Shown: one piece after another, positions 315 through 37,064 of the stretch
Numbering within the stretch: position 1 is the first letter of the stretch
Layout of the letters: each line of letters opens with the position of its first letter
IMG/VR virus record: IMGVR_UViG_3300013120_000738
Location: 163,726-227,725 of that record
Length of the DNA stretch: 64,000 bases
Reading direction: 5' to 3' (one strand)
Translations under genes and position numbers: made by a program
The notes under the pieces: model-generated
Database searches by the model: none
Told to the model about the DNA's origin: nothing
The model's input: the letters and a program-made list of their open reading frames with translations, nothing else

Positions 315-439
315 TAATTCCCCAATTGGAAATTTTTTGTCACAGTCTCTCTGGGAATTTCCAACTTGGAAATGCGAGTGGGGCCAAGGGTTTCATCGCC
401 CCTTGGCCCCATCCTCGCACGGCGGAGAGACTGTCTCAT

Positions 440-745
440 TTAGCCCCGCATTCGGCATCGATCCGCCATCCAATTGTTTGACGCTGCAGTAGATGTGTTC
501 GACCGTGCCATCGGGGTTTCTGATCGCGATCCGGGGATTTCCTGATTGGAAAACCCTGAAGGTGTGAGTTTGATGCCTTGATGGCCCAATTCTTTGGCCC
601 AATCGCTCAAAGCACGCGGTTGCATGCCTTCTACGGCTCTGGTGGCGGTCTCGACGGTCTCGCCGCGTTGTACGACCAGCTCCAGGACTATCAGCCGTAC
701 AAGTGAACTGTACGTGATGCTGGCGATGAGTGGCTTGTCTGCCAT
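440..745 (-). CDS. Hypothetical protein, 3' part possibly frameshifted or mosaic
   Basis: GGAGG RBS and operator upstream; last 47 nt are identical to 23337-23383. Confidence 0.5.
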   Translation of the reverse strand: MADKPLIASITYSSLVRLIVLELVVQRGETVETATRAVEGMQPRALSDWAKELGHQGIKLTPSGFSNQEIPGSRSETPMARSNTSTAASNNWMADRCRMRG

Positions 746-875
746 GGGGTGAATCCTCCCGGCGATTTCCTAGCAGGAAACGCGTATAAACAGGAGCGGG
801 GTGCCGAGGATGTGGCTGCGAGCCTATGACGCTGCCAGTCGAACCTCGACACCCCGCGAGCGGAGAGACTGATTC

Positions 876-977
876 CTATTGGAGCCACCAGGCTCCCTGC
901 GGGGTCGACGTCAAGATGAACGTGCTGAACGCTGCGGACGCGACCGCGTAGGCCAGTACAACCAAAACAAACCGCAT
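876..977 (-). CDS. 33-aa hydrophobic peptide
   Basis: MRFVLVVLAYAVASAAFSTFIL; downstream of promoter at 1066. Confidence 0.4.
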   Translation of the reverse strand: MRFVLVVLAYAVASAAFSTFILTSTPQGAWWLQ

Positions 978-1101
978 GATCTTTCTCCGCGAAGTGTGTG
1001 AAAAAATGGCCGGGTCGCGACGAGCGACCCGACCGCTCGAAAGGAGATTGACTCGTACACTATCCTGTGACGAACCGATCCACAAGGTGAAATCCGCCAG
1101 A

Positions 1102-1314
1102 TCACCGCATCGAGATGATCTCGCGGACTTGGCCGTACTCCAGGAGTGGTGGCAGCTCGTACGTGCTGCTCGAGGGACGCGGCTGGCAGTGCTGCGTCAG
1201 CTCGTCGTACGATTCCACTCCCAGATAGTAGCGAGCCGCGATGATGCACATTTTGTGCGACCAGTTCGCGTGGACTTCTCGCAGCCGGTGAACCATCTGC
1301 AAAAACGTCTCCAT
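1102..1314 (-). CDS. Hypothetical protein
   Basis: RBS and promoter at 1369. Confidence 0.55.
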   Translation of the reverse strand: METFLQMVHRLREVHANWSHKMCIIAARYYLGVESYDELTQHCQPRPSSSTYELPPLLEYGQVREIISMR

Positions 1315-1569
1315 GTCTCTCCCTCCTCGAAAATAGTCCTCTTGCCGGTTATCTTCCGGCTGTCCGTTTGTGACAGACCGGTCCGAGGAGTGAAACTGGC
1401 TTTGGAGTTCTTGAATGGATATTTTCGGGCTTTGGTCGCATTCAGACCACCGACCGGCAGCGGCCGATTTCACGCGGGGCCACCGGCTTGTCACAGTGGG
1501 GCAGCGGAGAGAGGCGGCGGTGGTCGTCGCCGACCCGCACCACACCACTCTTTTTTCGGAGGTGCAGAC

Positions 1570-1755
1570 ATGCACAAGAAAGCCATCGCAGCCCTGCTCG
1601 AGTCTCTGGTCAAGCGCGTCGTCGCCAAGGCGAACGAGGCGGAGTGCGGCGACGAGCCCGCACTCGAGGAGGCGGAAGCCCGCACTCTCGTGGGGATCTG
1701 GCTCCGCAAGAACGCGGGGAAGGTCGTGAACGAGATCTGCGACGTCGAGGACTGA
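1570..1755 (+). CDS. Small protein MHKKAI..., paralog A
   Basis: GGAGG RBS, promoter 1489; paralog at 4961-5155. Confidence 0.8.
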   Translation: MHKKAIAALLESLVKRVVAKANEAECGDEPALEEAEARTLVGIWLRKNAGKVVNEICDVED

Positions 1756-1836: not shown

Positions 1837-2109
1837 ATGTCGTACGAACCCGACACAAGCCACTTGTCGCACGAGTGGCTCGGCATCGACCAGAAGGCGG
1901 CCGACGAAGGCGAAGCTGAAAAGCGATCCTTCCGATCCGTCACGAAGGTCGGCGAGCGGTACAAGAAACCGCGTGGCAAAAATGGCCGCACCCCGGCAGC
2001 ACGGGCCAAGGCCGAAAAGAAAGAGGCGAAGCTCTCGAAAGAGGCGGAAGCCCTCGCGAGAGAGGCACGGCTCCGCAAGATGATCAACCGCATCTTGTCG
2101 AGCGACTAG
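1837..2109 (+). CDS. Basic hypothetical protein
   Basis: Promoter 1776, leader hairpin, RBS. Confidence 0.7.
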   Translation: MSYEPDTSHLSHEWLGIDQKAADEGEAEKRSFRSVTKVGERYKKPRGKNGRTPAARAKAEKKEAKLSKEAEALAREARLRKMINRILSSD

Positions 2110-2509
2110 GTCTCTCCTCACACCGAGCAGGCCGCTTGGGGTCATCCCTGGGCGGCCTGCTCACTTATGCGCGTCCATTTCCACACAGGAAACGCCCCAA
2201 ATGTGCTACAGGACATAAGTTTCTTGCTGGGCCATATCGAAGAGTTCTTGGCGGTTCTCCAGCTGAATGTGTTGTTCCGAAAATGTTTGAGCGAACCCAG
2301 AACATATCTAGATGTGTTCCTCGAAGGAGCCTAAATCTTCTGTCTGACGCATTCAGAATCTTCAGATATATCCATTCTAGAGGAGAATTTTCCTTGAGTG
2401 GGCATATCTGGCGGTTCTGAACGTGCTTTCACGCTTGTATGGCCGTCTGTAACAGTATTGAAAGGGGAGGACAGGCCTTCCCGCAATTTCCAACCAGGAA
2501 AGGAGTGCT

Positions 2510-2812
2510 ATGAAAAAGCGAATAGTGGAGGTGCTGGCGTGGGACGAGATAAGTATGGTTCACTGTCTCTATCTGGATGCATGCGACGCCAGAATCGTGA
2601 ACGAGGACGACGAAGGCGAGCTGGCTCTGGAGATCAACGCGGATGATGCCACCATCGAGGCCTTCCTGCGGCGTCTCTGGCACGACGACGAGGACGAGCC
2701 GGGCTGGACAGTGGCCAAGATATCTCGCGGAGAGGCCACGATCACCGTAGAGTGGCGGAGCGACCGCAACCACCTCGCCGTGAACACGCTGATGTTTGGG
2801 CCGTACGCCTAG
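2510..2812 (+). CDS. Hypothetical protein
   Basis: Promoter 2448, hairpin, operator 2487 abutting AGGAG RBS. Confidence 0.75.
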   Translation: MKKRIVEVLAWDEISMVHCLYLDACDARIVNEDDEGELALEINADDATIEAFLRRLWHDDEDEPGWTVAKISRGEATITVEWRSDRNHLAVNTLMFGPYA

Positions 2813-2954
2813 AAGTCTCGAATATGCCCACCCAAAAGAATTTATTTCTGTGGGTGGGCTTCTTTGTGGATTTCGGGCGTGCTTTCACGTCCGTCTAGTC
2901 GTCTGTCACACCAGAGGAGTAATCCCCTGAATTTCCAACCAGGAAAGGACGAAC

Positions 2955-3230
2955 ATGAAGACATGGCAGACTGGACAAAGAGTCCGAATCCGTTGCACTG
3001 ATCGCGGCAAAGTAATAGCCCGCGACGAGGATCCCGTTTACTTGATCTGTGGGACTCACTCAACTCGAGGAATGTGGTTGAGCGTCGAGGATGACACATA
3101 TGACGGCTACACGGCCGACGTAATCGTCCACGACGACACAAGCGGCGACGCAGACGACCCCACGTACCGCGTCGTACTGCAGGACAGCCGAGGTTCTCTG
3201 AGCCCCCGCGTCGTTCTGGTCGCGGCTTAA
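2955..3230 (+). CDS. Hypothetical protein (possibly SH3/KOW-like beta protein)
   Basis: Promoter 2904, operator 2932; WQTGQRVRI start. Confidence 0.7.
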   Translation: MKTWQTGQRVRIRCTDRGKVIARDEDPVYLICGTHSTRGMWLSVEDDTYDGYTADVIVHDDTSGDADDPTYRVVLQDSRGSLSPRVVLVAA

Positions 3231-3310
3231 CGCACACACTACCGTTTGTCACACCAGGAGAGAGGGGAGGAAAGACCTCCCCGAATTTCCAACCAGGAAA
3301 GGAATAGCCA

Positions 3311-3652
3311 ATGGCGGAGACAAAATCACTGGAGCTCCCAATCGAGGACTCGTACGTCCCAAGTGCTGGAGAGCTCAACAACTTCGTGTACTTGGTCTGC
3401 AAGTACACAGTCAACTGGGGCATGCGGGCCTGTGACCTGCAAGTCTGTCTGATGATGGCTGGCGGAGCCGAAGAGATCAAAGGCAATGCAGGACTCACCA
3501 AGCTCTGTGAAGTGACCTGCGAGTACTTGTGGGATCACGTCTGCGGTGAGCCCGAGGAACCGACCACCGACCAACTCTTCGACCACATCAAAGAGGGCCT
3601 GCAGGCCTGGTACAAGAACAGCACGCCAGAAGAAAGGGCCGCAACCGAATAA
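3311..3652 (+). CDS. Hypothetical protein
   Basis: Promoter 3247, operator 3286. Confidence 0.75.
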   Translation: MAETKSLELPIEDSYVPSAGELNNFVYLVCKYTVNWGMRACDLQVCLMMAGGAEEIKGNAGLTKLCEVTCEYLWDHVCGEPEEPTTDQLFDHIKEGLQAWYKNSTPEERAATE

Positions 3653-3737
3653 ACGCGGCCGATATTGCTTGTCACACGTCCTTGGGGCGGGGATTATCCT
3701 CGTCCCAAGGATTTCCAAGCAGGAAAGCGAGAGACAG

Positions 3738-3917
3738 ATGATCTTTGTGATCCGAGACAACACCAACGCATGCTTGCTGACCGGCACGCGTGTCGTCGAA
3801 GCCGACGACGAACGAACAGCATGGGAGCACGTCGCCAAATCCTGGCCATTGCCCCCATACAACCAGAGAGACGACTGCGAGTATCAAATTGTCCCCCAAC
3901 CAGTGGAGAAGGCATGA
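3738..3917 (+). CDS. Hypothetical protein
   Basis: Promoter 3670, operator 3712. Confidence 0.65.
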   Translation: MIFVIRDNTNACLLTGTRVVEADDERTAWEHVAKSWPLPPYNQRDDCEYQIVPQPVEKA

Positions 3918-4132
3918 AAGCTGAAACACGACCAGGAATCATTACCAGCAGCCCAGATGACGCCGATTGCTTCGATTGGCTCAGTGATGGCTGGTATCAA
4001 ATATCTATCCGGCACACACCGGAAGCTCAAGCACTCATGGCGAAAGCCAAGAGCTGCATCGAAGATGGCGAGGACGTACCAGACGTGATCAGAAGACTGG
4101 AAGAGGCTGGCTTCGTCGTCTCCCGCCAATAG
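3914..4132 (+). CDS. Hypothetical protein
   Basis: ATGA-coupled to the previous gene. Confidence 0.7.
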   Translation: MKAETRPGIITSSPDDADCFDWLSDGWYQISIRHTPEAQALMAKAKSCIEDGEDVPDVIRRLEEAGFVVSRQ

Positions 4133-4162
4133 TCCCCTAGATTTCCCAGCAGGAAACGCATT

Positions 4163-4186
4163 GAGCCCCGGCTGCCGCCGGGGCTC
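4163..4186. terminator. Hairpin between convergent genes
   Basis: GAGCCCCGG/CCGGGGCTC. Confidence 0.6.
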
Positions 4187-4196
4187 TTCAAATGCG

Positions 4197-4907
4197 CTAT
4201 TCGCCGCAGTAAGCTTTGGCGGCGTCGAAGGCCTCTTCTTCGGATTTGGGTTCGCGATTGAATACCACGAAGAGACGATGATTGGGTATTGGAGAATCTG
4301 GCCACGCACCCCAATAGCGGCAGACTCCCTCGTCGTACTGCGGCACCGAGTCCGCGTCGTGAACGTCCTCGGAGCAGATCGAGGCCATTACCTGGAGCTC
4401 CCCATCGGGGTTCGTCGTCAAGTCGACGATGTACGGTCCAAGGAGGTCTTCCTTGTCGAAGCCGTCTCTCAGAGCGTGTTCATCCAACGTCGCGTTGTCC
4501 ACGATGTGGCCAGCAAAGATGTGTTGTTTCTCAGGCCAGCCGTAGACCGACGTGTTGCTCGTGGAGGTAATCACATCCGTCAGATAGTTGTGGCCTTCCT
4601 CCAAACGAACATGACAGGGAGTGTCAAGAGACCAAAGAAGCTCGGAGAATTCCTGGGATTCTTCTACACTGAGCCGATTGCCCTTGAATATCGGGTACCC
4701 CAGCTCGTCAAATCCTCTCGAGATCATATACTGGAGGTCTTGAGCTTTGGGTTGGCCTGCCCAGATTTCTTTGGTGCTGATGATGCGTCCGTCGTCGAGT
4801 TCGATGGCTTGCAGCTGTGCTCGGCAGGTTGTGCCGTCGTATTTGCAGTTCTCGTAGACGCGGAGATAGAGTTTGGTCGCTTTCAAGTGCTTTCTCCTTA
4901 TGCACAT
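4197..4907 (-). CDS. Hypothetical protein (~236 aa)
   Basis: Long ORF with protein-like composition. Confidence 0.7.
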   Translation of the reverse strand: MCIRRKHLKATKLYLRVYENCKYDGTTCRAQLQAIELDDGRIISTKEIWAGQPKAQDLQYMISRGFDELGYPIFKGNRLSVEESQEFSELLWSLDTPCHVRLEEGHNYLTDVITSTSNTSVYGWPEKQHIFAGHIVDNATLDEHALRDGFDKEDLLGPYIVDLTTNPDGELQVMASICSEDVHDADSVPQYDEGVCRYWGAWPDSPIPNHRLFVVFNREPKSEEEAFDAAKAYCGE

Positions 4908-6296: not shown

Positions 6297-6334
6297 GCGA
6301 TTTCCTCCTTGGAATATGGCCCACCACAATAATA

Positions 6335-6592
6335 CTACCCACCCGCGTGCTCGCACGCGTCCGCGATTTCCTCCCTGGAAATCCGATAGATCAAATGTGT
6401 GCCACAATCCTCAGTGAATTGAATAGTCTCGTCCTCTTGCAGACCCACGGCCAAGGCAATCCCATAGATCACTTGGGACTCGTCCAACATGGGGCAAGCA
6501 CCGATTTGAATGAGCTTCCGGCCATCATCACATCGATATATGGGGAATTGCCCATTCTCTTCTTGCTTGCTAACGTAAATCAGTAATGCCAT
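6335..6592 (-). CDS. Hypothetical protein
   Basis: ORF in operon; contains operator 6367. Confidence 0.6.
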   Translation of the reverse strand: MALLIYVSKQEENGQFPIYRCDDGRKLIQIGACPMLDESQVIYGIALAVGLQEDETIQFTEDCGTHLIYRISREEIADACEHAGG

Positions 6593-6744
6593 TTGTCGTC
6601 TTCCGTTTCGTCGTCAACCTGGAGCTCGGCGTTATCCGCCGGAAAGTCTCCGTTCCGTGTCACGTCCTCGATCGTGTGTTCAACGGCAGCACGCGGTGCA
6701 TCCGTGAACGTCAAAACGACTGTGTAGTCTCCGCCCTTCGGCAT
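6580..6744 (-). CDS. 54-aa hypothetical protein (MPKGGDYTVV...)
   Basis: Read by hand; below the ORF-track cutoff; fills the operon gap. Confidence 0.55.
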   Translation of the reverse strand: MPKGGDYTVVLTFTDAPRAAVEHTIEDVTRNGDFPADNAELQVDDETEDDKWHY

Positions 6745-6747
6745 TTC

Positions 6748-7017
6748 TCATTCCTTCTTCCAGAGGCCATCATCGCCTTGTACCCAGCCATGCCCGACGC
6801 TCGGACGCGGCCACAGTGTTTTAATCGTGAACTCAGTCCGCCAAAGATACCCAACTCTCGTCGGGCGTGTGTCGGACCGTGTAGAGATGCGAAAGCCCTC
6901 GTCTTCGCCTTTGCAGCCGTGAGCGTAAGCGTGTCTGTCGCCCTCGACGATGTACAGATTGCTGGTGGCTCCGAGAGCTTTGGCACGGCTGACGCTTGCT
7001 TCTACTGCGTTTCTCAC
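6748..7017 (-). CDS. Hypothetical protein
   Basis: GTAGGAG RBS in a duplicated leader. Confidence 0.6.
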   Translation of the reverse strand: MRNAVEASVSRAKALGATSNLYIVEGDRHAYAHGCKGEDEGFRISTRSDTRPTRVGYLWRTEFTIKTLWPRPSVGHGWVQGDDGLWKKE

Positions 7018-7059
7018 GTGTTTCTCCTACGCTGTGGTGGTCGGGGAACTCGCCCCCGT

Positions 7060-7263
7060 TCACCATTTCTTAAAGACGTATGGCTTCCCGACCTCGTCCC
7101 CATCGAGTTCATCGGGATCACAATCCGAAAGATCTTCCTCCGCTGTCAGTTCAAGGTCGAACTTTTCAGCAGTACAAAGATCACCATCGATGAGCAAAAC
7201 CTTAGCATCCTCGGCTGGCGGCAAATTCGCAAAATACGTAGCTGCTTCTGCGTTCGTCATCAT
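7060..7263 (-). CDS. Acidic hypothetical protein
   Basis: Same duplicated leader and RBS. Confidence 0.6.
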   Translation of the reverse strand: MMTNAEAATYFANLPPAEDAKVLLIDGDLCTAEKFDLELTAEEDLSDCDPDELDGDEVGKPYVFKKW

Positions 7264-7325
7264 TTTCTCCTACGTTGTGGGGGCCGGGGAACTCGCCCCG
7301 GCCCCCGTCCGGCACCCCCAGGTCT

Positions 7326-7802
7326 TTACAGCCCTTCTGGATGCAAACTGTCTTTCAATGGCTCGCAGAATTCCGTACGGATCTCCATGAGGATTTTGCC
7401 GAGGTGGTTTTGGCCCTTGACGTGGCTGCATCCCTCGCAAGAGCAGACTCCCCAGAAGTCGTCGTGCCAGTTGTTGCCCTCGACAAGCTCCGCGTCCTCC
7501 GTCTGTGCCAGACGCTCCCAGAGATCCGGATTCCGCTTGAATTTGTCGCGGATGATCTCCCGCATGACGTCGATTTTGATGGCGTCCCACTCAGGACGCA
7601 AGGTGACGCGGCGGCCTGCCCGTTTGGCTTGGCCGGGCGTCGAGCAATCCTGGATGCCGTGTCGCTCTTCGATGTCCGTGGTCTTGGCCGCTTGAAATGC
7701 GTGCTCGCTCGAACTGAAGATCATGCCCTCGAAATGGACTTCGCACGGGTGGAAGTTGCTCAAGAATTTGTTGCTGCCCTTGAAGCTTTTGATGGCTTCC
7801 AT
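7326..7802 (-). CDS. NADAR (YbiA/DUF1768) family protein
   Basis: FLSNFHPC, SSEHAFQAAK, AKRAGR, W..IK..VM, LVEGNNWHDDFWG, GQNHLGKILM. Confidence 0.92.
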   Translation of the reverse strand: MEAIKSFKGSNKFLSNFHPCEVHFEGMIFSSSEHAFQAAKTTDIEERHGIQDCSTPGQAKRAGRRVTLRPEWDAIKIDVMREIIRDKFKRNPDLWERLAQTEDAELVEGNNWHDDFWGVCSCEGCSHVKGQNHLGKILMEIRTEFCEPLKDSLHPEGL

Positions 7803-7880
7803 TCGTCTCTCCTTTGCCTGGGGGTTCTGGGGACGCGAACCGTCCCCTTCACCCCACTGTGACAAACGTCGGCCTCCGAG

Positions 7881-8204
7881 TTAAACCCTGCAGGTCATTT
7901 GCCTCTTCAGTTCACGACCCCGCTCAGGTGTGCAAAAACCACCGTCCTTGAGTTGCCGCTGGAGGATTGCCGCCTCCCGCGTCGGCATCGGAATACTCAC
8001 GAATACTGGTCGACTATCGGTCCAAATGACGAGGCAAACTTCCTCATTGCACTTCGGACATTCTTTTGGCGGCGTCCCAGCCGTCCAATGAACGGTAAGA
8101 GTTTTATGCTCGTTGTAGAGCTGGTCACACTGGTTACAAAACCACCGACCGCCAGGCATAGTGTGGATCACTGGGGGAGCCTCCGATAAAAACTCCCTAA
8201 TCAA
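7881..8204 (-). CDS. Zinc-finger hypothetical protein
   Basis: CNQC...CPKC. Confidence 0.55.
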   Translation of the reverse strand: MIREFLSEAPPVIHTMPGGRWFCNQCDQLYNEHKTLTVHWTAGTPPKECPKCNEEVCLVIWTDSRPVFVSIPMPTREAAILQRQLKDGGFCTPERGRELKRQMTCRV

Positions 8205-8213
8205 AGATAAAGT

Positions 8214-8612
8214 ATGACTACCAAAATTTGTAGCCGTTGTAATACCTTAACTCCAATCGAGGAATTCCCATTAAAGTACAACAAAAATCATCCTACTGCT
8301 AGAAAATCACACTGTAAAACATGTGAATACAAACGAATTAGAGAAAAACACCAAAAGCACAAAGCAGAGTTTAAAAAACGTGCTATTGAGTACTTGGGTG
8401 GTAAATGCTCTAATCCGTCATGCCCAATTTCTTCGCTCAACCTTCCAATTGAGATTCTTGACTTTCACCACAAAGGCGATAAAGATTCTTGTATCTCAAC
8501 ATTACTTAGCAAAAACACAACATGGACAACCATCAAAAAAGAATTAGATAAATGCGTCTTGTTATGTGTTCTATGCCATCGCCTTGAGCATTTAAAAGTC
8601 GGGCGGGTCTAA
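8214..8612 (+). mobile_element. HNH homing-type endonuclease
   Basis: N-terminal CxxC; YLGGKC, DFHH, CVLLCVLCHRLEH; AT-rich and antisense to neighbours. Confidence 0.85.
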
Positions 8613-8676
8613 GGGTGACATCCCCTTAGACCCTTTTTGTCTCCTGCACACAGAAACAAAACCCGACTCGGAGAGA

Positions 8677-9570
8677 TCAGGACTCTTCCATACGCATGAT
8701 GTAATCCATCTCCGCTTCCAACTCCTCCACCGGCGACAAGTCCGCGTAAGGATTCGTCGGCTCCGGAACCGTCGCCACCGGCACATCCCGCGTCAACGGA
8801 CCTGCCGGGACCGAATCCTGCCACCGCTCCGCGTCCGTCGCCCCAACCAATACCTCCGGATGATCCGCGACAAACTCCCGAGTCTCGGCCGCGTTCGGAT
8901 ACCAGGCCCGATAGTTGCTGGCACAGGTCTTGCCGCAGCCCGCGATCTTGGACTGGGCTTGAGTGAGAGCACTCCAGCAGTAGCAGCACATCCCGGCCTC
9001 TTTGCCGATCTCGCTGATGGCCTTCGCGGGATCCTCAGCGATCCGTCGCAGCAAATCCACCACGTCCTGACCGCACTCGTTACGCTTCTCGAAGGTACCG
9101 GTCGGCTGAATCCAGCCAAAGAAGTCACCCTCGCCGAATCGGTGGGATTCCGCCACCGAGACGCAACCCTTGTTGCGGGAGCGGGGACCTGCCAGCTTGA
9201 GCGTGAACTTGGTCCCGTTCAGATCGATGCGGACTTGGGGATTCTTGAGGCCAGCCCCGCCAGCGTCGCGGCGTGCTCGGCATTGCTCCATGTGGTCGAC
9301 GATCGTCTCCATGCCGGTGATCGCCTCGGGCTTGCGATCCGCCAGAAGCGGCTGATCGACCTGGAAGACAAAGAAATGAGCCCAAGCGGCCTGATTGGGG
9401 AACCATTGGTGGTACTTGGCGTACTTGGCCAGCAGAGTGCCGCCGTATTCGTACGCGAAGTTGCTCTTGAGCGAGCCCGCCCTGTGGTATTTCGCCAACC
9501 GGCGAGCCACTTCAGCATCCTCGTGGGGGCTCTCGAACTCTCCGAAATTCTTGACCTTGTAAGTCGTCAT
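8677..9570 (-). CDS. DUF6011-like protein
   Basis: C-terminal GMCCYCWSALT...S...GCGKTCA motif; promoter 9612. Confidence 0.65.
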   Translation of the reverse strand: MTTYKVKNFGEFESPHEDAEVARRLAKYHRAGSLKSNFAYEYGGTLLAKYAKYHQWFPNQAAWAHFFVFQVDQPLLADRKPEAITGMETIVDHMEQCRARRDAGGAGLKNPQVRIDLNGTKFTLKLAGPRSRNKGCVSVAESHRFGEGDFFGWIQPTGTFEKRNECGQDVVDLLRRIAEDPAKAISEIGKEAGMCCYCWSALTQAQSKIAGCGKTCASNYRAWYPNAAETREFVADHPEVLVGATDAERWQDSVPAGPLTRDVPVATVPEPTNPYADLSPVEELEAEMDYIMRMEES

Positions 9571-12063: not shown

Positions 12064-12625
12064 GCGATTCCCTTTCTGGAACAAGACCGTACTTTGCGAG
12101 TACATCGGTCATGTGTTGAATGTAATCGGCCCCGCTCACCGGCTTATCAAGATTGTAAAATTCATTCCCATCAACCAGGTCAAGAAATAACCCGTCGCGT
12201 GCATGGTGTACAATCTCAAGGAGTCCTTCCACGCTCACCGCTTCCACACGCCCCACGCGTACGCTCGCGATTTCCTCCATGGAAATCGGCTGGACATTAA
12301 CATGGTATCTATACTCCCCAGTACAAGCACTTCCGGCCATGTAACCGGAATTCTCTTCAAAGGAGAGACCAGAGGCATCCCAGTTACCATCGGACGACTC
12401 AAAATCAACCCAAGGATGTTGCGGTGTCCACTGTTTCGCAATCAACTTCTTGCAGTCATCAGCAGTACACCGGAGCCAAGCGTTGTCCTCATACGACTCA
12501 CCACAGAGCCAAAGAACAAGAGCTGCGATCGGCGTTTCAGCCTCAATAGTCTCGTCGGCCTGTAGAGTAGGATCCCCCATAGTATCCTCATGCCGAACCA
12601 AGCAGGTCAACCGCCATTTATTCAT
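12026..12625 (-). CDS. Hypothetical protein
   Basis: 199-aa ORF; contains operator 12271. Confidence 0.65.
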   Translation of the reverse strand: MNKWRLTCLVRHEDTMGDPTLQADETIEAETPIAALVLWLCGESYEDNAWLRCTADDCKKLIAKQWTPQHPWVDFESSDGNWDASGLSFEENSGYMAGSACTGEYRYHVNVQPISMEEIASVRVGRVEAVSVEGLLEIVHHARDGLFLDLVDGNEFYNLDKPVSGADYIQHMTDVLAKYGLVPERESHERKDTSLDESG

Positions 12626-23653: not shown

Positions 23654-23673
23654 CGTGATTTCCTCTCTGGAAA

Positions 23674-24192: not shown

Positions 24193-24225
24193 GCTCAACC
24201 TCCGATGATTTCCTAGCAGGAAATC

Positions 24226-27804: not shown

Positions 27805-27872
27805 GGAAACATTGAGTATGTAAGCTCAATGTATTTAAGGATCCCACTAAAATTTCCCATAAGGAAAGCATC

Positions 27873-28283: not shown

Positions 28284-28320
28284 GCACGCCCTAGTCCTCG
28301 ACCGCACCAGAAACATAGAA

Positions 28321-28610
28321 CGACCCCCGACCATTTCCACGGAGGAAATCGTACGGGGGCTCCTCTTATATCCGAACGTAATCTTACGCGTTCGCATAAG
28401 TCCTCATAAGGCCTTGAGGACTTTCTAGACGCCCGCTCGATTTCCTCCGTGGAAATAACCCCCCTTTACCGGGTGGCGGGCTTCACATATATCTCCGAGC
28501 TTCTCCTTTAGCTTCCCTTGAATTCTACGCGCGTGAAGGGCCGGAAGTCCTAGAGAGTGCTTGCGGGTCAGAAAGATATCTTCCGTGGCCTCGGAGATAT
28601 ATCCGGTCTT
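28321..28610. other. Putative replication origin or genome-end junction with nested inverted repeats
   Basis: 19-bp perfect IR 28333-28351/28438-28456; 13-bp perfect IR 28487-28499/28590-28602; strand skew inverts here. Confidence 0.6.
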
Positions 28611-28704
28611 GTTGGTGTTTTGGAGATTCGGGTATTTTATTTCTCTGTTAGTATAGTTATTGGTCTTTGTGGTGGGTTTCTTGGGGTGATTTCCCCTTTG
28701 GGAA

Positions 28705-29165
28705 TTATTTGGGCCAGCCGGTGTGGTTTCTGAACCAGTGGGTGAGTTTTTGGATGCTTTGGGGGTCGTTGAGGTCGCATTGGTAGCAGATTGTTGGGCG
28801 GTCTGCTGGTTGGATTGTGAGGGTTGTACCTTGGATTTTTATTTTGTGGCTTGGGGCGTGGCAGCAGGTGGCGGGTTTGTCGTAGGTCCAGCGGTGTGAG
28901 CCGTCTGGTCCTTGGTAGTAGTGGATGTGGAGGTGGGTTATTTGGGTTTGGAGTTCTTGTCTTATGGCTTCTATTGTTGGGTTTTTGGGGTTTGTGGGGG
29001 TTAGGAGGATTTGGTCTGTGATGTTGAATGCTTGTAGGTGTTTGAGGATTTGTTGTGGTGTGTAGGTTTTGTGAGGGTTTTGCCTGTGGGGAGTTGTGCT
29101 GTGTAGGTTTTGTTGGGGTTTGTGAGTTTTTGGAGGTTTTTTATGGTTGCTTTGATTTTGGTCAT
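28705..29165 (-). pseudogene. DLxDP-family protein, frameshifted (missed by ORF track)
   Basis: MTKIKATIK... joins the -1 frame KTYTPQQILKHL...CYQCDLNDPQSIQKLTHWF near 29070. Confidence 0.6.
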
Positions 29166-29199
29166 GATTTGTGTTTATGTCGTGGAGTTCTGGGATCCA

Positions 29200-29493
29200 T
29201 TAGTTTTCGAGTTGGTCTAGGAGGTCTGTGAGGTTGTCGGGTGTGGCTCCTATCCATTCTGTGGCTGTGGTGATGGCGTTTTGGATTCCTTCGGTGATTT
29301 TTTGCATTTTTTGGACGTAGTCGTGGAGTTGGTTGTAGGCTGAGAGGCCGTGTTGGGCGACGTGTCTTGGGTCTGTAGGGATTGTTTTTTTGAGGGTTTG
29401 GTAGAGGTGTCCGAGGTATTTGCAGAGGAGGCAGTAGTTTATTGCTTTTGCTATTTGGGTGTAATAACTCGAAAAACCTTCGCAAGAATTCAC
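29200..29493 (-). CDS. Hypothetical protein
   Basis: GTGA-coupled. Confidence 0.6.
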   Translation of the reverse strand: MNSCEGFSSYYTQIAKAINYCLLCKYLGHLYQTLKKTIPTDPRHVAQHGLSAYNQLHDYVQKMQKITEGIQNAITTATEWIGATPDNLTDLLDQLEN

Positions 29494-29810
29494 TCGAAAG
29501 AAGTCCTTATAATTTTTACGAGATTTTCTAGGACGTCTGGATCGGCTATTGGAAGTTTTCTATTCTCGGTACTAAAATGATGCTCTAGGAATGGGTTTTC
29601 TAGAACTACATCAAGAAAGTCACCGCTGTGATAAATCTTTGCTTGTTTTCGACTCTCGTATGGATTATGTGATTCACTGTAGACTCTAACTCGCGGAATT
29701 CTAGCGGCGTTATCAATCTCTACACCGCAATCGAAGCCCTGAGAAAGCAAGTATTCCTCGACACCGTGTAGGATCGCTGCGGTGATACCCCATTCAGCTG
29801 TCAGAATCAT
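29490..29810 (-). CDS. DLxDP-family protein
   Basis: LPIADPDVLENLV. Confidence 0.65.
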   Translation of the reverse strand: MILTAEWGITAAILHGVEEYLLSQGFDCGVEIDNAARIPRVRVYSESHNPYESRKQAKIYHSGDFLDVVLENPFLEHHFSTENRKLPIADPDVLENLVKIIRTSFE

Positions 29811-32126: not shown

Positions 32127-32354
32127 CTAAAAACCCGCTTGTAATCGCCCTATTGCGTTTTCTATTCCATTGCCGCTTTTTCTTTTATCGTCCCGACCAA
32201 GCAAAGTGTCTATGAGTGGGAGGCCTAGCTGTTGGCGGACGTAATTATTCAGGCTTAAGTCCGCAGCCTTAGCCCTTCTGTTCAAATCGTGTCTTTCGCT
32301 TTCGTGTCCCCTTACGGTGACAATAACGATGCACTTTTCCGGCTGTTCATCCAC
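32127..32354 (-). CDS. Ribbon-helix-helix-like DNA-binding protein
   Basis: IVTVRG..SERHDLNRRAKAADLSLNNYVRQQL. Confidence 0.6.
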   Translation of the reverse strand: MDEQPEKCIVIVTVRGHESERHDLNRRAKAADLSLNNYVRQQLGLPLIDTLLGRDDKRKSGNGIENAIGRLQAGF

Positions 32355-32758
32355 TATTTGATCTCCCTATCCCAGGACTTGCCAACTTCCCATGGATGCT
32401 TACCGTCTTCTTTCATGGCTTTCGCATCCTCTGAGAGTGTTTCTGTAATGGCGTTTAGAAATTGCTCAAAGGTACAGTTATAGAATACATTCTTTGTATT
32501 GCTCAATACTATAACGCCACCAATTATTGTATTATCTTCAAGAGTAAGTGTACCTCTTCCAATACCATCATCATCGTCGACCAGAAGATTACGTAAATCC
32601 TTAACTGTACGTGATGCTGGCGACTGTGACAAAGGAATATCGGCGCATTCAGTAAACTTGAGCCTAGCACACTCCGCATCTGGTACATCAATAGCAAAAT
32701 CGAAAACAAAACTTTTTTCGCTTTTTTCAGTGATTCGTACTAAAAAACTACCACTCAC
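32354..32758 (-). CDS. Hypothetical protein
   Basis: Coupled ORF. Confidence 0.6.
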   Translation of the reverse strand: MSGSFLVRITEKSEKSFVFDFAIDVPDAECARLKFTECADIPLSQSPASRTVKDLRNLLVDDDDGIGRGTLTLEDNTIIGGVIVLSNTKNVFYNCTFEQFLNAITETLSEDAKAMKEDGKHPWEVGKSWDREIK

Positions 32759-34244: not shown

Positions 34245-35200
34245 CTCCGTTTCTTTTTAGCCTTCTTAGCTGCCTCTGCTTCGCGTACCGATTCAACATC
34301 AATTTTGTAATACGGCTCATGTTGAGGAATCTGATATCCCCTCTTCACTAACTTCTCAACATATTCATCGCACAGGGATAACAGAAATTCCACGTCTCTC
34401 TCAAATTTAAGACCTCTCGCAGTTTTCAAATACCAGATCTGATTTTTCTGTTCGTGTGGACCAAAACTGAAATGATATGTTCTGATTCGGTCAGGACTGA
34501 TCTTATCAAAATCTGTGACACTCCAGCTAGACACATTAATACCATAAGTCAACTGATCTAATACTTTGTACGATCTACAATAAATCGGAATGAAATTCCC
34601 CCACTTCTGGTCAACAAACAATCCTGTCAATTGCTTTTTTTCTGACTCTGAACCGTTTATACAGAAGTACTTTAATCTCTTTATCCACCATCCGAGTAAA
34701 TCATTATCGCGTCTTAGTCCTAAGAAACCGAAATTGAAAATTCCACGCTTCAGATAAATCGTTTCAAGTGTCTTTATGTCTCGTATAGACTCCTCTGGAG
34801 TACACCTGTGCGGAGTTACCAAGATCGGAGATTCATCAAACAAAGGCTCCAAATCAAGATATTGCAACACATACTGATCAGGATCTAGATGAACTACTCT
34901 TTCATATTCCTTGAAAAGACGATTAAATACATGACCCTTGATAGCCGTACAAAGCTCTACGATAGTATAAGACTTAGCCCATCTTGGCGTTCTAAATTCT
35001 ACAATTCGATCGATAGCAGGGTTATCGCGAAGCTCTTGCGGAACTGCACTATGGCAATCGACGCTAGTATTGACTAGAATCCAAATAAACGGATCATCGT
35101 GGAACCTTTTAAAGGACTCTGCGAGCACTTGTACTTGTGGAGCATAATTAAGATCAGATATCGTGAAATACGCAATCACTTTAGCCCCTTCGTGACACAT
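34241..35200 (-). CDS. GT-A (GT8-like) glycosyltransferase
   Basis: ELCTAIK, HLDPD (DxD), LVTPH, GIFNFGF, FVDQKW, GINV. Confidence 0.85.
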   Translation of the reverse strand: MCHEGAKVIAYFTISDLNYAPQVQVLAESFKRFHDDPFIWILVNTSVDCHSAVPQELRDNPAIDRIVEFRTPRWAKSYTIVELCTAIKGHVFNRLFKEYERVVHLDPDQYVLQYLDLEPLFDESPILVTPHRCTPEESIRDIKTLETIYLKRGIFNFGFLGLRRDNDLLGWWIKRLKYFCINGSESEKKQLTGLFVDQKWGNFIPIYCRSYKVLDQLTYGINVSSWSVTDFDKISPDRIRTYHFSFGPHEQKNQIWYLKTARGLKFERDVEFLLSLCDEYVEKLVKRGYQIPQHEPYYKIDVESVREAEAAKKAKKKRR

Positions 35201-35427
35201 CTTTTACAGATGAAATCGTCCGGAGACCATCTATCACCTTCAGTTGTCGCTCTAAGCTTTGCATATTCATCGCTTCTATACCACTCTTCTAGCGAATGGT
35301 CGTTGATATTTGGGAGAGTTACTTCACGATGATAATCCATACAACAAAGAGCTAACTGCCCATCGTACATTATATGAACCCATTTGCAAATCCTACTACA
35401 TCGCCTTAAATTGCTGGACTTTTGCAT
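35176..35427 (-). CDS. Stand-alone SPASM-type Fe-S domain
   Basis: CSRICKWVHIMYDGQLALCCMDY...NI...SLEEWY....Y..LR...ICKRC. Confidence 0.8.
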   Translation of the reverse strand: MQKSSNLRRCSRICKWVHIMYDGQLALCCMDYHREVTLPNINDHSLEEWYRSDEYAKLRATTEGDRWSPDDFICKRCVTKGLK

Positions 35428-35559
35428 AGCTACTCTGCACGTGGACAAGGACGACCGGATCACCAGGGGCATCCAAATGATCCGTCGTCATAGAGAACTT
35501 TACGCCACCACCAACCTTAGGAGTAATTTCGGTGACGCGGTAAGCAACTGTCGATTCGT

Positions 35560-35751
35560 CTAGCACGATCGAAGAAGTCCTGTACCAATCAAATCGTTCA
35601 CAGCTTGTTTCAGAAGAGCCTCTTGTTGATGCTTCTTATGCTTCTCGTCCTTCTGAGTATGGGCGACGGCAGCCTCTTCATCAGTCAAGTCCACCGTTTC
35701 ACCACAGACAGGGCACCGAGCCTCAGTCGGGAACATCGTACCACTAAGCAT
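35560..35751 (-). CDS. Small Zn-finger protein
   Basis: CPVC...AH...H. Confidence 0.55.
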   Translation of the reverse strand: MLSGTMFPTEARCPVCGETVDLTDEEAAVAHTQKDEKHKKHQQEALLKQAVNDLIGTGLLRSC

Positions 35752-36046
35752 TTTCTTCTTCCTCTCTACGTCTTCGACGTCGCTTAACCTTCTCGATCCC
35801 ATCGGCAATAGCGGCCCACAGAAACACACCGCCAAGCCCAAGAACAAAACCTACCGGAATCTCAAAGACCACACAGAGCAACTTCTGCCAGAACGTAGCT
35901 GGACCAAAAGCCCACCAAATCCCGTAGATGGCACCACACCACAATGTGATCACAAAGATCGCAGAAATGATTGGTCCACCAATCACATTCAGCACAGTAT
36001 TGAAAAGAGCACTTTCTGCTCGATCAAGCAGTGTTCGCCGCCGCAT
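35744..36046 (-). CDS. Two-TM membrane protein
   Basis: Two hydrophobic stretches, basic C-tail. Confidence 0.65.
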   Translation of the reverse strand: MRRRTLLDRAESALFNTVLNVIGGPIISAIFVITLWCGAIYGIWWAFGPATFWQKLLCVVFEIPVGFVLGLGGVFLWAAIADGIEKVKRRRRRREEEENA

Positions 36047-37013
36047 TTTTTAGACCTTCCTCGAAAAATTGTACATGATTAAAGTGCTCGAAACCGAGCC
36101 GATTAGCCCAAGTCCGATCTTTTGTCTGATCACCAACATAAATGCACTGGTCGGGATCAAGAAAGTACTTGCGAATGAAGTAAACGCCCATTCCACTTTG
36201 AGGCTTCACACAATAACACGAGTCCCCAGGCGGTAAATGTGGGCAATACTGTAACTCATCCACGGTGACACCGAGCTGCTTGTGTGTCTCATCGAAGCAC
36301 GCTTTGGCTTGTTCTCTCGACAAAACTCCCTTCGAAACACCTGACTGATTCGACGCCCCCAAGAGAAGATAACCCTGATCCCGATAATATTGCATGACTT
36401 TACCGCGACCAGGAATAACAGAGACTTCACTTGGTTGGCACGGATACTTGCCGTTGCCGCCATTGGTGAATCTAAGAGTGCCATCATAATCGAAGATAAC
36501 AGCCTTGTTGCAGAATGCCGTTCCAAGGGGATTTCTCTTGAACTTGATCTTCTCGATCTTGGCGTAACCCTCGGCCATTGTGGGCTTCTCAAACTGCTTG
36601 CGGTACAGGAATAACACCGCTGGCGGGAAGATGTTTGGGTCATTCTTGGCTTGCGGGTGATCCGCGATCTCATTAGCAGTCCTGAAGACGCACTCATAAC
36701 GATCCCACATCCGGTGGAGTGCGTTGATTTGACAATCCTCGATTTTGATGTCCATCAAGACGCATTTGACCGGCACACCATGTTGTTTGGCGAGGTCGAT
36801 GAACGGTTGCCGCATGCCATTGGTCGGAAAGGTATTGTCGAGAACTACGCTCTCACCCTTAGCGAGACACCTACCGACTGCTGGTAGTAAATCCATGACC
36901 TTGCCGCTTACAAGATCTCGGCTGACGTGTCGATAGCCTCGGTCGATGTAAGTTTTGGAGATACCTGTTTTGCCGGAGGCTTGTGGCCCCACCAACATTA
37001 TCACTTCTTGCAT
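36024..37013 (-). CDS. Polynucleotide kinase/3'-phosphatase-like (P-loop kinase + HAD IIIA)
   Basis: GPQASGKT, VSRD, VVLDNT; IFDYDGTL, ASNQSGV, CPH...C.C.KP..GM, YVGD. Confidence 0.88.
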   Translation of the reverse strand: MQEVIMLVGPQASGKTGISKTYIDRGYRHVSRDLVSGKVMDLLPAVGRCLAKGESVVLDNTFPTNGMRQPFIDLAKQHGVPVKCVLMDIKIEDCQINALHRMWDRYECVFRTANEIADHPQAKNDPNIFPPAVLFLYRKQFEKPTMAEGYAKIEKIKFKRNPLGTAFCNKAVIFDYDGTLRFTNGGNGKYPCQPSEVSVIPGRGKVMQYYRDQGYLLLGASNQSGVSKGVLSREQAKACFDETHKQLGVTVDELQYCPHLPPGDSCYCVKPQSGMGVYFIRKYFLDPDQCIYVGDQTKDRTWANRLGFEHFNHVQFFEEGLKNAAANTA

Positions 37014-37064
37014 GAGATACTCTCTTTCATGTACGCGATTTCCAGTCTGGAAATCTGTTACAGA

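What the first reader, a model, noticed from the sequence alone, without database searches (positions are those of the whole stretch)
358..37053. A 16-site palindromic operator network linking early genes to the putative origin
Seen: TTTCC-N5-GGAAA (often GCGATTTCC-N5-GGAAAT) occurs 16 times against about 0.06 expected. Most copies lie between a promoter and a start codon or overlap the RBS (766, 2487, 2932, 3286, 3712, 6301, 23659, 24209, 37039). Some are inside ORFs (538, 6367, 12271), and two form the 19-bp inverted repeat at the skew switch. Established: ParB-family KorB of RK2 and the mycobacteriophage L5 repressor (stoperators) act through dispersed sites. Inference: one dimeric protein co-regulates early genes and replication or partition. 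Candidates here are the ParB-HTH (51453-52484), XRE (52951-53301) and RHH (32127-32354) proteins.
Basis: partly seen in the sequence, partly recalled or inferred. Interest (0 to 1): 0.82.

Follow-up and report, generated by a model that had tools for sequence, protein, structure and literature searches.

The report
Conserved hairpin motif punctuating huge-phage genes
A 15-base palindromic motif really is scattered 17 times through 37 kb of an uncultivated huge phage and is kept letter-perfect in its relatives, marking gene starts and operon ends, but what reads it is unknown and nothing ties it to a replication origin.

Summary
TTTCC-N5-GGAAA occurs 17 times exactly (0.13 expected), all between 358 and 37053, and 16 of 19 sites (two are near-sites) lie in the 19% of that stretch that is non-coding. 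The window is the last 64 kb of a 228-kb huge-phage contig. The same motif is the top inverted repeat in syntenic relatives whose marker protein is only 45-70% identical: 58 exact copies in 193 kb against 6 one-mismatch copies, about chance.

The full motif is asymmetric (R-TTTCC-W-N-N-G-A-GGAAA-T-C-G) and co-oriented with transcription. It often carries or abuts the Shine-Dalgarno sequence, also sits inside operons and at operon ends before hairpins, and is absent from divergent promoter regions. A separate two-box promoter-like motif exists. The "skew switch" is a local convergent-gene junction, not an origin signal; relatives carry four co-oriented copies there.

My best reading (about 40%) is a sense-strand RNA hairpin acting after initiation. 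A DNA-bound dimer acting as a stoperator-like roadblock is a close rival (about 30%). None of the three proposed binder proteins gained support. The closest known cases are the dispersed repeats of Cluster O, K and A mycobacteriophages.

The parts
318..332 (.). Near-site (1 mismatch, TTCCC arm) just upstream of a TGTCACA box
358..372 (.). Site 12 nt downstream of the TGTCACAG box, followed by a GC hairpin, at the convergent junction of genes 118-314(+) and 440-745(-)
538..552 (.). Site inside ORF 440-745(-)
766..780 (-). Site 20 nt upstream of the ATG (745) of gene 440-745(-), with a separate GGGAGGA Shine-Dalgarno sequence between
2178..2192 (.). Site in the 3' region after gene 1837-2109(+) and its hairpin
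2487..2501 (+). Site in the 5' leader; its right arm plus GGAG forms the SD, 8 nt before the ATG at 2510
2932..2946 (+). Site in the 5' leader, 8 nt before the ATG at 2955
3286..3300 (+). Site in the 5' leader, 10 nt before the ATG at 3311
3712..3726 (+). Site in the 5' leader, 11 nt before the ATG at 3738
4142..4156 (.). Site 9 nt after the stop of gene 3914-4132(+), directly before a GC hairpin at a convergent junction
6301..6315 (-). Near-site (1 mismatch), 4 nt before an in-frame GTG (6296)
6367..6381 (-). Canonical oriented site (loop AGGGA, flank TCGCG) in overlapping ORFs; an in-frame GTG lies 10 nt downstream
12271..12285 (-). Canonical oriented site inside ORF 12026-12625(-); an in-frame GTG lies 14 nt downstream
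23659..23673 (-). Operon-internal site starting right after the upstream stop codon, 5 nt before the ATG at 23653
24209..24223 (-). Operon-internal site 2 nt after the upstream stop, 16 nt before the start of the DMP19-like gene. The promoter-like box for this operon is at 24561
27853..27867 (+). Site whose right arm serves as SD, 5 nt before the ATG of gene 27873-28283
28333..28357 (+). Left arm of the 25-nt inverted repeat. It holds site 28334 in sense orientation for the + operon ending at 28283
28432..28456 (-). Right arm of the inverted repeat. It holds site 28441 in sense orientation for the - strand genes arriving from the right
28480..28600 (-). Conserved ~90-nt non-coding block that precedes the first junction site in the window and in L118, L119, L128 and L123. 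An 11-nt inverted repeat brackets it
37039..37053 (-). Intergenic site 11 nt after the upstream stop and 25 nt before the ATG of the polynucleotide kinase/phosphatase-like gene 36024-37013

Best explanation
The motif is an oriented 'punctuation' element of the early/middle gene region of a clade of uncultivated huge phages. It acts after promoter escape, not as a promoter operator. The most likely mechanism is as follows. Transcribed on the sense strand, it forms a 5-bp stem with a 5-nt loop (UUUCC / W-N-N-G-A / GGAAA) followed by U-C-G. The 3' half (GAGGAAAU, or GGAAAGGAG in the early leaders) is, or abuts, the Shine-Dalgarno sequence. A conserved trans-acting reader then recognises this hairpin to tune or shut off translation and/or transcript stability of the flagged genes. 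Copies at operon ends, and the tandem arrays of four at one conserved convergent junction, would then act as decoys or as 3'-end barrier elements.

Shown: the motif, its conservation, its asymmetry, its orientation and its positions. Inferred: that it works as RNA, that a protein reads it, and what the outcome is.
For: 1. Selection: 17 exact sites against 0.13 expected, and 16 of 19 non-coding. It is the top inverted repeat in relatives L118, L119, L120, L122, L123 and L128, whose marker protein is 46-57% identical to the window's. Across the clade there are 58 exact copies in 193 kb against 6 one-mismatch copies, about chance.
2. Asymmetry and orientation: the 3' side is conserved beyond the dyad (loop ends in G-A, flank T-C-G-(C)-G) while the 5' side is not. 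Orienting by loop purines alone gives 39 '+' to 6 '-' in loci whose genes are mostly '+'. In the window the orientation flips with gene direction (766, 6301-24209, 28441 and 37039 on '-'; 27853 and 28334 on '+').
3. The site must be in the mRNA. The right arm or loop supplies the SD 4-11 nt before start codons at 2487, 2932, 3286, 3712, 27853, 23659 and 6301, and likewise in L315, L291, L119 and L123. ATG-initiated ORFs begin within 12 nt downstream of 19 of 78 sites in sense orientation against 8 of 78 in antisense (P = 0.03).
4. It is not a promoter element. A separate two-box motif, TT(T)AAC or TTTCAC, then N14-15, then TTGT(C/A)ACA, precedes genes 15 times. Sites 24209 and 23659 are operon-internal, downstream of the box at 24561. 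No site lies in the divergent region 25885-26096.
5. Site-plus-hairpin modules end operons, and co-oriented arrays of four sit at the same junction in L118, L119, L123 and L128.
Against: The predicted probability that the 5-bp hairpin forms in its native context is no higher on the sense strand (mean 0.52) than on the antisense strand (0.61), and it is below 0.2 at many sites. Invariant arms, a freely varying centre and a 10-bp centre-to-centre half-site distance are the classic signature of a DNA-bound dimer. No compensatory or G-U stem variants occur, so structure alone is not what is selected. No RNA-binding regulator or nuclease family (CsrA-, RegA- or RegB-like) appears among the window's Pfam or PHROG hits. 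More than half of the sites are not within 30 nt of a start codon. Distant relatives carry other palindromes next to sigma-70-like promoters, which looks like DNA-level control.
Confidence: 0.4

Rival explanations
1. DNA-level site. A phage-encoded dimeric DNA-binding protein binds the 17-20-bp dyad. It acts mainly as an orientation-dependent roadblock to elongating RNA polymerase (stoperator-like), shutting off early and middle operons and insulating convergent ones.
For: The 5+5 arms are perfect with exactly N5 between them, so half-site centres are 10 bp (one helical turn) apart, and the central 3 bases vary. Invariance of this kind has precedent: the Cluster O 17-bp dyad has invariant arms at all 34 Corndog sites, and the authors read it as a dimeric-protein site (PMC4351075). 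Stoperators are intergenic and oriented with transcription (PMC4351075, PMC3203893). Sites lie in 5' leaders, inside operons and stacked at a convergent junction, where roadblocks would make sense. The near-site at 318 and the site at 358 bracket a TGTCACA box 40 bp apart. A small basic helical protein family (gene 27873-28283) sits next to the junction sites in six genomes. RNA folding gives no sense-strand advantage.
Against: A homodimer does not explain why only the 3' half is extended (G-A inside, T-C-G outside) in about 45 of 50 oriented sites. Divergent promoter regions carry no sites. Spacing between neighbouring sites shows no clear helical phasing (R = 0.39 at 10.5 bp, P about 0.05, no better than other periods; n = 20).
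Confidence: 0.3
2. A factor-dependent transcription pause, termination or processing signal. The hairpin plus U-C-G marks where a phage or host enzyme stops transcription or cuts the transcript, separating cistrons and closing operons.
For: All three convergent junctions in the site-bearing 37 kb carry a site beside a hairpin (314-440, 4132-4197, 28283-28700). The same holds for L124 4269 and L120 2382, and for the last copies of the arrays in L119, L123 and L128. Four co-oriented copies face a convergent operon in four relatives. A C+A-rich, G-poor tract, reminiscent of a Rho loading site, precedes the conserved block and the junction sites. Many GC hairpins next to sites lack a U-run.
Against: A terminator between an early promoter box and its own start codon (2487-3712), whose arm also serves as that gene's SD, would block the gene unless the signal is conditional. 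No nuclease or termination factor was identified. Nothing here measures 3' ends.
Confidence: 0.13
3. A promoter for a second polymerase or sigma factor, for example an N4-like hairpin promoter, or TTTCCA as a -35 with a TATAC-like -10.
For: Several sites in L120, L122 and L123 are followed after 14-16 nt by (T/C)ATAC(G/A). The conserved 3' flank could hold a start site. Tandem copies recall stacked early promoters.
Against: At eight or more sites the start codon is 0-8 nt after the motif and the motif itself is the SD, so it must be transcribed from upstream. At five or more junctions the 'promoter' would fire antisense into the 3' end of a convergent gene. The TATAC box is not general. A distinct, well-defined promoter-like motif already precedes genes.
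Confidence: 0.05
4. Replication origin or partition (centromere-like) sites read by a ParB/KorB-type protein, as the reader proposed for the pair at 28.3-28.5 kb.
For: There is a cluster of repeats in a non-coding region, and relatives have 4 copies there. KorB operators are likewise perfect dispersed palindromes (general knowledge). A weakly ParB-like ORF exists at 51453-52484.
Against: The cumulative GC skew falls steadily across the window, with only a 3.5-kb local excursion that matches convergent genes with C+A-rich coding strands. The copies in the arrays are co-oriented with transcription and spaced 63-146 bp apart, unlike iterons. The ParB-like ORF has no Pfam or PDB match. No initiator or ParA-like gene was found nearby.
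Confidence: 0.05
5. Mainly a recombination hot spot or cassette boundary, like T4-type promoter/stem-loop cassettes or the Cluster O repeats, spread by duplication and with little regulatory role of its own.
For: In L120 a ~600-nt module is duplicated, and each copy begins with the site (97.5% identity over 40 nt, then 87-89%). The window's early leaders are a repeated cassette. Sites are not at orthologous positions between relatives; for example, the DMP19-like gene has a site only in the window. Recombination between Cluster O repeats is documented.
Against: Most copies share nothing beyond about 20 nt. Letter-perfect maintenance across genomes at about 50% protein identity and 45-59% GC needs ongoing selection on the sequence itself.
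Confidence: 0.05

Closest known systems
Cluster O mycobacteriophage 17-bp dyad repeat (TGTTCGG-NNN-CCGAACA; PMC4351075)
   Same: There are dozens of copies per genome. The arms are invariant with almost no one-mismatch copies, and the centre varies. Copies are mostly intergenic and concentrated in one part of the genome, most are not near promoters, recombination between copies makes indels, and the function is unknown.
   Different: The sequence and geometry differ (7+3+7 against 5+5+5). The Cluster O sites show little orientation bias and are not tied to start codons. Here the motif is asymmetric, co-oriented with transcription, often carries the SD, and forms tandem arrays at one conserved junction.
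Cluster K mycobacteriophage start-associated sequences, SAS/ESAS (PMC3203893)
   Same: The repeat overlaps the RBS and contains an SD core, has positions conserved beyond what rRNA pairing needs, lies in one orientation, numbers 11-19 copies restricted to the non-structural half, is conserved across subclusters on non-orthologous genes, and has an unknown reader.
   Different: SAS is a non-palindromic 13-mer, almost always 3-7 bp from a start codon. Here only about a quarter to 40% of copies are that close, the core is a perfect dyad, and there are operon-end copies and arrays.
Cluster A (L5) stoperators
   Same: They are dispersed, intergenic and oriented with transcription, and are proposed to stop elongation (as summarised in PMC4351075 and PMC3203893).
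   Different: Stoperators are asymmetric 13-mers bound by the prophage repressor of a temperate phage. Here the core is a dyad, and no repressor or integrase, and no sign of lysogeny, was seen in the window.
KorB operators of RK2 and dispersed ParB/SopB sites (general knowledge)
   Same: They are perfectly conserved palindromes dispersed over a replicon and read by one protein.
   Different: Those sites have no fixed orientation and are placed relative to promoters. A true ParB/KorB protein was not confirmed here.
RNA-level analogues: T4 RegA/RegB regulons, lambda boxB, Csr/Rsm targets with sponge RNAs (general knowledge, not tested)
   Same: Many early mRNAs are hit at the SD. boxB has the same 5-bp stem and 5-nt purine-rich loop geometry. 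A multi-hairpin non-coding array alongside single RBS sites follows the Csr/Rsm logic.
   Different: In those systems the loop or single-stranded bases are conserved and the stems vary, whereas here the stems are invariant. No homologue of RegA, RegB, N or CsrA was found in the window.

Membership tests
   17 against 0.13 expected; also the top inverted repeat in relatives
   Only 358, 2487, 2932, 3286 and 3712 lie within about 50 nt downstream of a promoter-like box. 23659 and 24209 are operon-internal. None lies in 25885-26096
   Only the 3' half is extended (G-A inside, T-C-G outside), and the site is co-oriented with genes
   The candidates are weak: ParB-like PHROG hit at E = 1e-4, the XRE candidate has no hit, RHH matches NikA-like at 1.4e-4
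Stoperators (Cluster A mycobacteriophages) | Intergenic, within operons, one orientation relative to transcription | tested here: met
Stoperators (Cluster A mycobacteriophages) | Asymmetric 13-bp consensus bound by an immunity repressor of a temperate phage | tested here: not met
   The core here is a dyad with an unrelated sequence. No repressor or integrase family appears among the window's hits
Start-associated sequences (Cluster K) | Virtually all copies lie 3-7 bp upstream of a start codon and contain the SD core | tested here: inconclusive
   True for a subset: 19 of 78 sites have an ATG ORF within 12 nt, against 8 of 78 in antisense. Many copies are at operon ends or in arrays
Cluster O-type invariant dyad repeats | Invariant arms, variable centre, dozens of copies, clade-specific | tested here: met
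   58 exact against 6 one-mismatch copies. Absent from relatives at or below 40% marker identity
Cluster O-type invariant dyad repeats | Same sequence or homologous phages | tested here: not met
   The motif differs, and no similarity to GenBank phages was found
Replication origin (iterons at a skew switch) | Replichore-scale skew reversal at the site | tested here: not met
   Only a 3.5-kb local excursion; cumulative skew is otherwise monotonic
Replication origin (iterons at a skew switch) | Adjacent initiator gene or AT-rich unwinding element | tested here: inconclusive
   None was recognised in 26-30 kb. Most of those ORFs have no known family
CRISPR repeats or solitary repeat units | 28-37-nt repeat with regular spacers or a full repeat mimic | tested here: not met
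   Only about 20 nt are conserved and spacing is 63-146 bp. The metagenome CRISPR arrays that contain the 15-mer (L263, L301) share nothing else with it
Csr/Rsm-type regulon with sponge RNA | GGA in hairpin loops at the RBS, plus a multi-hairpin non-coding RNA | tested here: inconclusive
   Loops often read A-N-G-G-A and arrays of 4 exist, but the stems are invariant and the arm GGA would be paired
Csr/Rsm-type regulon with sponge RNA | A CsrA-family protein is encoded | tested here: not met
   None among the window's Pfam hits at E below 1e-4. The rest of the genome was not examined

The most novel reading that the evidence does not exclude
Huge phages of this clade, possibly infecting Planctomycetota, run a private post-transcriptional regulon. 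One invariant SD-bearing hairpin flags dozens of early and middle genes. A conserved non-coding transcript with four copies of the hairpin, preceded by a conserved structured block, acts as a decoy that titrates the hairpin's reader. This would be a virus-encoded counterpart of the Csr/Rsm protein-plus-sponge logic.
Probability: 0.12. Interest if true: 0.8.

Novelty: new variant of a known kind. Interest (0 to 1): 0.5.

Why it matters
Dispersed, letter-perfect short repeats have been described in several phage groups (Cluster A, K and O mycobacteriophages), but a function is known only for the stoperators. This case extends the phenomenon to uncultivated huge phages. It combines features that were previously seen separately: invariant dyad arms, strict orientation with transcription, embedding in ribosome-binding sites, and a conserved tandem array. 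It gives a sharp, testable handle on how a 230-340-kb phage schedules a roughly 37-kb block of early and middle genes: a 20-nt site, an all-or-none sequence rule, and a defined set of flagged genes. It also provides a clade marker that can be searched in metagenomes. The separate two-box promoter-like motif found along the way is useful for annotating these genomes.

Tried and rejected
- **Near-identical DNA:** none in plasmid or phage collections, and no cultured-phage relative of the marker protein.
- **GATTTCC-N5-GGAAATC in viral contigs:** only single chance hits. The 18-mer TTTCCAGGGAGGAAATCG found only the source contig and unrelated coding matches.
- **Two-site pattern in metagenomes:** Only about 8 loci were clade members.
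- **Literature search for the motif string:** nothing.
- **Promoter reading of the motif:** rejected (see rivals). The sigma-70 consensus scan shows no enrichment.
- **Rfam:** nothing at the junction except a sub-threshold rdlD hit.
- **RNA hairpin probability, sense against antisense:** no difference.
- **Helical phasing of site spacing:** not significant at n = 20.
- **Gene 27873-28283 as binder:** it is conserved next to the junction sites in 6 genomes. However, Pfam, Atlas, PDB sequence and fold searches give no DNA- or RNA-binding assignment, and no homologue was found in the fetched parts of L120, L122 and L125.
- **Proteins downstream of sites:** all are ORFans.
- **Walking the right end:** my first gene-walking look-up there failed because the ORF start differed from the recorded product.

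Full report
**What the window is.** The 538-aa ORF at 20972-22588(-) is 100% identical to a gene on IMG/VR contig IMGVR_UViG_3300013120_000738, which is 227,725 bp long. Coordinates place window base 1 at contig base 163,726 and window base 64,000 at the contig end. Identical proteins also occur on a 340-kb contig. Nothing similar exists among GenBank phages or plasmids. The family hits are:
- a helicase and a polynucleotide kinase/phosphatase;
- sugar-nucleotide enzymes;
- a DMP19-like protein;
- several endonuclease VII/HNH-like ORFs;
- two Srd-like ORFs.

No structural genes were recognised. The nearest relatives of the marker protein in genome bins sit in Planctomycetota MAGs, including a 400-kb contig. 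This is only a hint about the host.

**The observation.** TTTCC-N5-GGAAA occurs 17 times exactly, against 0.13 expected. Allowing one mismatch adds 4 matches against 2.76 expected in total, and two of them (318 and 6301) sit in context.
- All sites lie between 318 and 37053.
- The remaining 27 kb of the window has none.
- The 11.4 kb to the left of the window on the same contig has none.
- About 8.8 kb beyond the right end, on a near-identical contig, has none.

With a curated gene map, 16 of 19 sites are non-coding where 19% of the DNA is non-coding (P = 1.4e-9). My automatic gene caller mis-assigned 26.0-28.3 kb. Reading the sequence shows four tiled + strand genes there, 26097-28283, one with a CxxCxxCC domain.

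**Conservation.** The marker protein has more than 300 homologues on large contigs. I fetched syntenic loci.

| Locus | Exact copies |
|---|---|
| L118 | 6 |
| L119 | 6 |
| L120 | 5 |
| L122 | 5 |
| L123 | 7 |
| L128 | 10 |

- In these six loci the same 15-mer is the most frequent 5+5 inverted repeat. Their marker identity is only 46-57% and their GC ranges from 45 to 59%.
- L124, L125, L129 and L136 have 1-2 copies. L189 (45% identity) and all relatives at or below 40% identity have none.
- Some distant relatives carry a different dispersed palindrome. For example, TGCAA-N4-TTGCA occurs 6-8 times in L140 and L156, often between a terminator and a sigma-70-like promoter.
- Across 193 kb of clade sequence there are 58 exact copies and only 6 one-mismatch copies, about the chance number. 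The motif is all-or-none.
- Sites are not at orthologous positions. For example, only the window's DMP19-like gene has one.

The motif is conserved more strictly than the genes.

**Anatomy.** Read on the coding strand, the motif is longer and asymmetric: R-TTTCC-W-N-N-G-A-GGAAA-T-C-G-(C)-G.
- In the tandem arrays, where no gene constrains it, the loop still ends in G-A and the flank is T then C or T then G. The base before TTTCC is G more often than the A that symmetry would require.
- Orienting sites by loop purine content alone gives 39 '+' to 6 '-' in relatives whose genes are mostly '+'. In the window the orientation follows local gene direction.
- A second class, the window's early leaders plus 27853, keeps only the 15-mer. 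Its right flank is GGAG or GGA, so GGAAAGGAG forms a long Shine-Dalgarno sequence 8-11 nt before the ATG.

**Where the sites sit.**
- *In 5' leaders.* 2487, 2932, 3286 and 3712 follow a repeated cassette: TTTCACGC, then N12-13, then TGTCACA, then a variable GC hairpin, then the site, then the ATG.
- *Between cistrons.* 23659 starts immediately after a stop codon and ends 5 nt before the next ATG. 24209, 37039, 6301, L122 6299 and L118 13371 are similar.
- *Just upstream of starts in other clade members.* In L315 three genes have the site exactly 8 nt before the ATG.
- *At operon ends next to GC hairpins.* Examples are 358, 4142, 28334, 28441, L124 4269 and L120 2382.
- *As arrays of four co-oriented copies.* These occupy one conserved convergent junction in L118, L119, L123 and L128 and are preceded by a conserved ~90-nt non-coding block. 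The window has one copy facing each way at that junction.
- *A few inside ORFs.* These are 538, 6367 and 12271.

An ATG-initiated ORF begins within 12 nt downstream of 19 of 78 sites in sense orientation, against 8 of 78 in antisense (P = 0.03).

**Promoters are something else.** A two-box motif, TT(T)AAC or TTTCAC, then N14-15, then TTGT(C/A)ACA(GT), occurs 15 times in the window, co-oriented with genes. It recurs in L123, L125 and the left flank. Sigma-70-type promoters are not enriched. Sites 24209 and 23659 lie downstream of the first gene of an operon whose box is at 24561. Divergent control regions such as 25885-26096 contain no site. The palindrome is therefore not a promoter. Apart from 5-6 leader copies it is also not a promoter-proximal operator.

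**The 'origin'.** The inverted repeat is real: 25 nt, 92% complementary. It lies where the + operon ending at 28283 meets - strand genes arriving from the right. The GC/AT-skew reversal is confined to 26.0-29.5 kb, where both convergent gene sets have C+A-rich coding strands. Cumulative skew over the window shows no turn. I found no initiator gene, AT-rich unwinding element or ParA-like gene. The origin link is unsupported, although replication cannot be excluded by sequence alone.

**Who reads it.**
- the ParB-like ORF has PHROG hits at E = 1e-4 only, with no Pfam or PDB match;
- the 'XRE' ORF has no hits;
- the RHH ORF has a weak NikA-like hit.

A positional candidate emerged instead. The small basic protein encoded by 27873-28283 has a site on its RBS and one after its stop. 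Its family sits directly beside the junction sites in the window and in L118, L119, L123, L124 and L128. Its AlphaFold model is helical (mean pLDDT 77) with a disordered Arg/Pro-rich linker. It matches no solved fold or family, so it remains only a lead.

**RNA or DNA?**

For an RNA (post-initiation) role:
- the asymmetric 3' extension;
- strict co-orientation with transcription;
- obligatory presence in mRNAs where the site is the SD;
- positions inside operons and in 3' regions;
- absence from untranscribed control regions;
- the all-or-none rule, since one mismatch in a 5-bp stem destroys it.

For a DNA role:
- invariant arms with a free centre, exactly one helical turn apart;
- the lack of any G-U or compensatory variants;
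- no sense-strand advantage in predicted hairpin formation (0.52 against 0.61);
- precedents: Cluster O dyad repeats with invariant arms, and oriented stoperators;
- the DNA-like context of other palindromes in distant relatives.

Helical phasing of neighbouring sites is not significant with 20 spacings. I put the RNA-level reading at about 0.4, the DNA roadblock at about 0.3, a termination or processing signal at about 0.13, and promoter, origin/partition and pure recombination scar at about 0.05 each.

**Comparison with known systems.** The nearest described phenomena are:
- the Cluster O 17-bp dyad repeat, with invariant arms, 34 copies, mostly not at promoters, recombination between copies and unknown function;
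- the Cluster K start-associated sequences, which are RBS-embedded, oriented, restricted to the non-structural half and have an unknown reader;
- Cluster A stoperators.

The present motif shares no sequence with any of them and combines their features, adding a conserved tandem array. I therefore rate it a new variant of a known kind, of moderate interest.

Noticed in passing
window, e.g. 5229(-), 7864(-), 24561(-), 25870(-), 31688(-), 45981(-), 63918(-) and 71, 338, 1489, 3247, 3670 (+); also L123, L125, L349: A two-box promoter-like motif, TT(T)AAC or TTTCAC, then N14-15, then TTGT(C/A)ACA(GT), precedes genes on both strands and is co-oriented with them. It loosely resembles ECF-sigma promoters (AAC ... 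GTC). Sigma-70-type promoters are not enriched.
   Followed up: partly
window 54902-54976 (-): A tRNA with anticodon TCA (ARAGORN calls it tRNA-SeC; Rfam tRNA score 63.9 bits), i.e. a possible UGA suppressor. Among confident window genes the stop codons are TAA 26, TGA 18 and TAG 14, so this window shows no sign of recoding.
   Followed up: partly
window 26000-29500: A compositional island. The coding strands of both convergent gene sets are strongly C+A-rich (GC skew reaches -0.5 and then +0.55), and they encode T/P/Q/N/K/H-rich proteins. The equivalent regions of L118, L123 and L128 look the same.
   Followed up: partly
window 28480-28600 (-); L118 5020-5090; L119 615-700; L128 2690-2760; L123 1405-1470: A ~90-nt non-coding block is conserved at the nucleotide level between phages whose proteins are about 50% identical. 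In the window it is bracketed by an 11-nt inverted repeat (28489-28499 and 28590-28600). RNAalifold predicts a hairpin with two compensatory pairs, and there is no Rfam match. It could be a small RNA or a 3'-UTR element.
   Followed up: partly
window 81-107 and 2551-2577; 56-79 (+) and 32623-32646 (-): There are exact long repeats. A 27-mer lies once in a 5' leader and once inside gene 2510-2812. A 24-mer that includes a TGTCACA box lies on opposite strands 32 kb apart. These suggest cassette shuffling.
   Followed up: no
window 27873-28283 (+); L118 5585-6049, L119 1163-1687, L123 2478-2951, L124 4345-4788, L128 3241-3771 (all -): A fast-evolving small protein family has invariant Trp and Arg residues and a conserved R-x-S-K-G-D-P-x-R-P-x-R-A-G-A-P linker. 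It is always encoded next to the junction sites. It has no known fold or family.
   Followed up: yes
window, coordinates not resolved: Four ORFs match endonuclease VII PHROGs, several match HNH endonucleases, and two match the T4 Srd anti-sigma family. This suggests many free-standing homing-endonuclease-like genes and T4-style host-takeover functions.
   Followed up: no
L120 2365-2950 and 3736-4330: A tandemly duplicated ~600-nt module in which each copy starts with the motif (97.5% identity over the first 40 nt, 87-89% further on). This is consistent with recombination at the sites, as reported for Cluster O repeats.
   Followed up: partly
L140, L141, L156 (distant relatives): A different dispersed palindrome, TGCAA-N4-TTGCA (extended form TTTGCAA...TTGCAAA), occurs 6-8 times per 21 kb. 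It typically lies after a terminator and just before a TTGACA-N17-TAGATT promoter.
   Followed up: partly
L188, L189, L190, L192, L193 (genome contigs): The closest marker-protein relatives in genome bins are in Planctomycetota MAGs (Pirellulaceae, Planctomycetaceae, Isosphaeraceae), including a 400-kb contig. This is a host hint from binning only. L189 lacks the motif.
   Followed up: no
L263, L301, L307 (metagenome contigs): CRISPR arrays whose 36-37-nt repeats begin with ATTTCC-N5-GGAAAC and end in ATTGAAGC. They share the 15-mer with the phage motif and nothing else, which is probably coincidence.
   Followed up: partly
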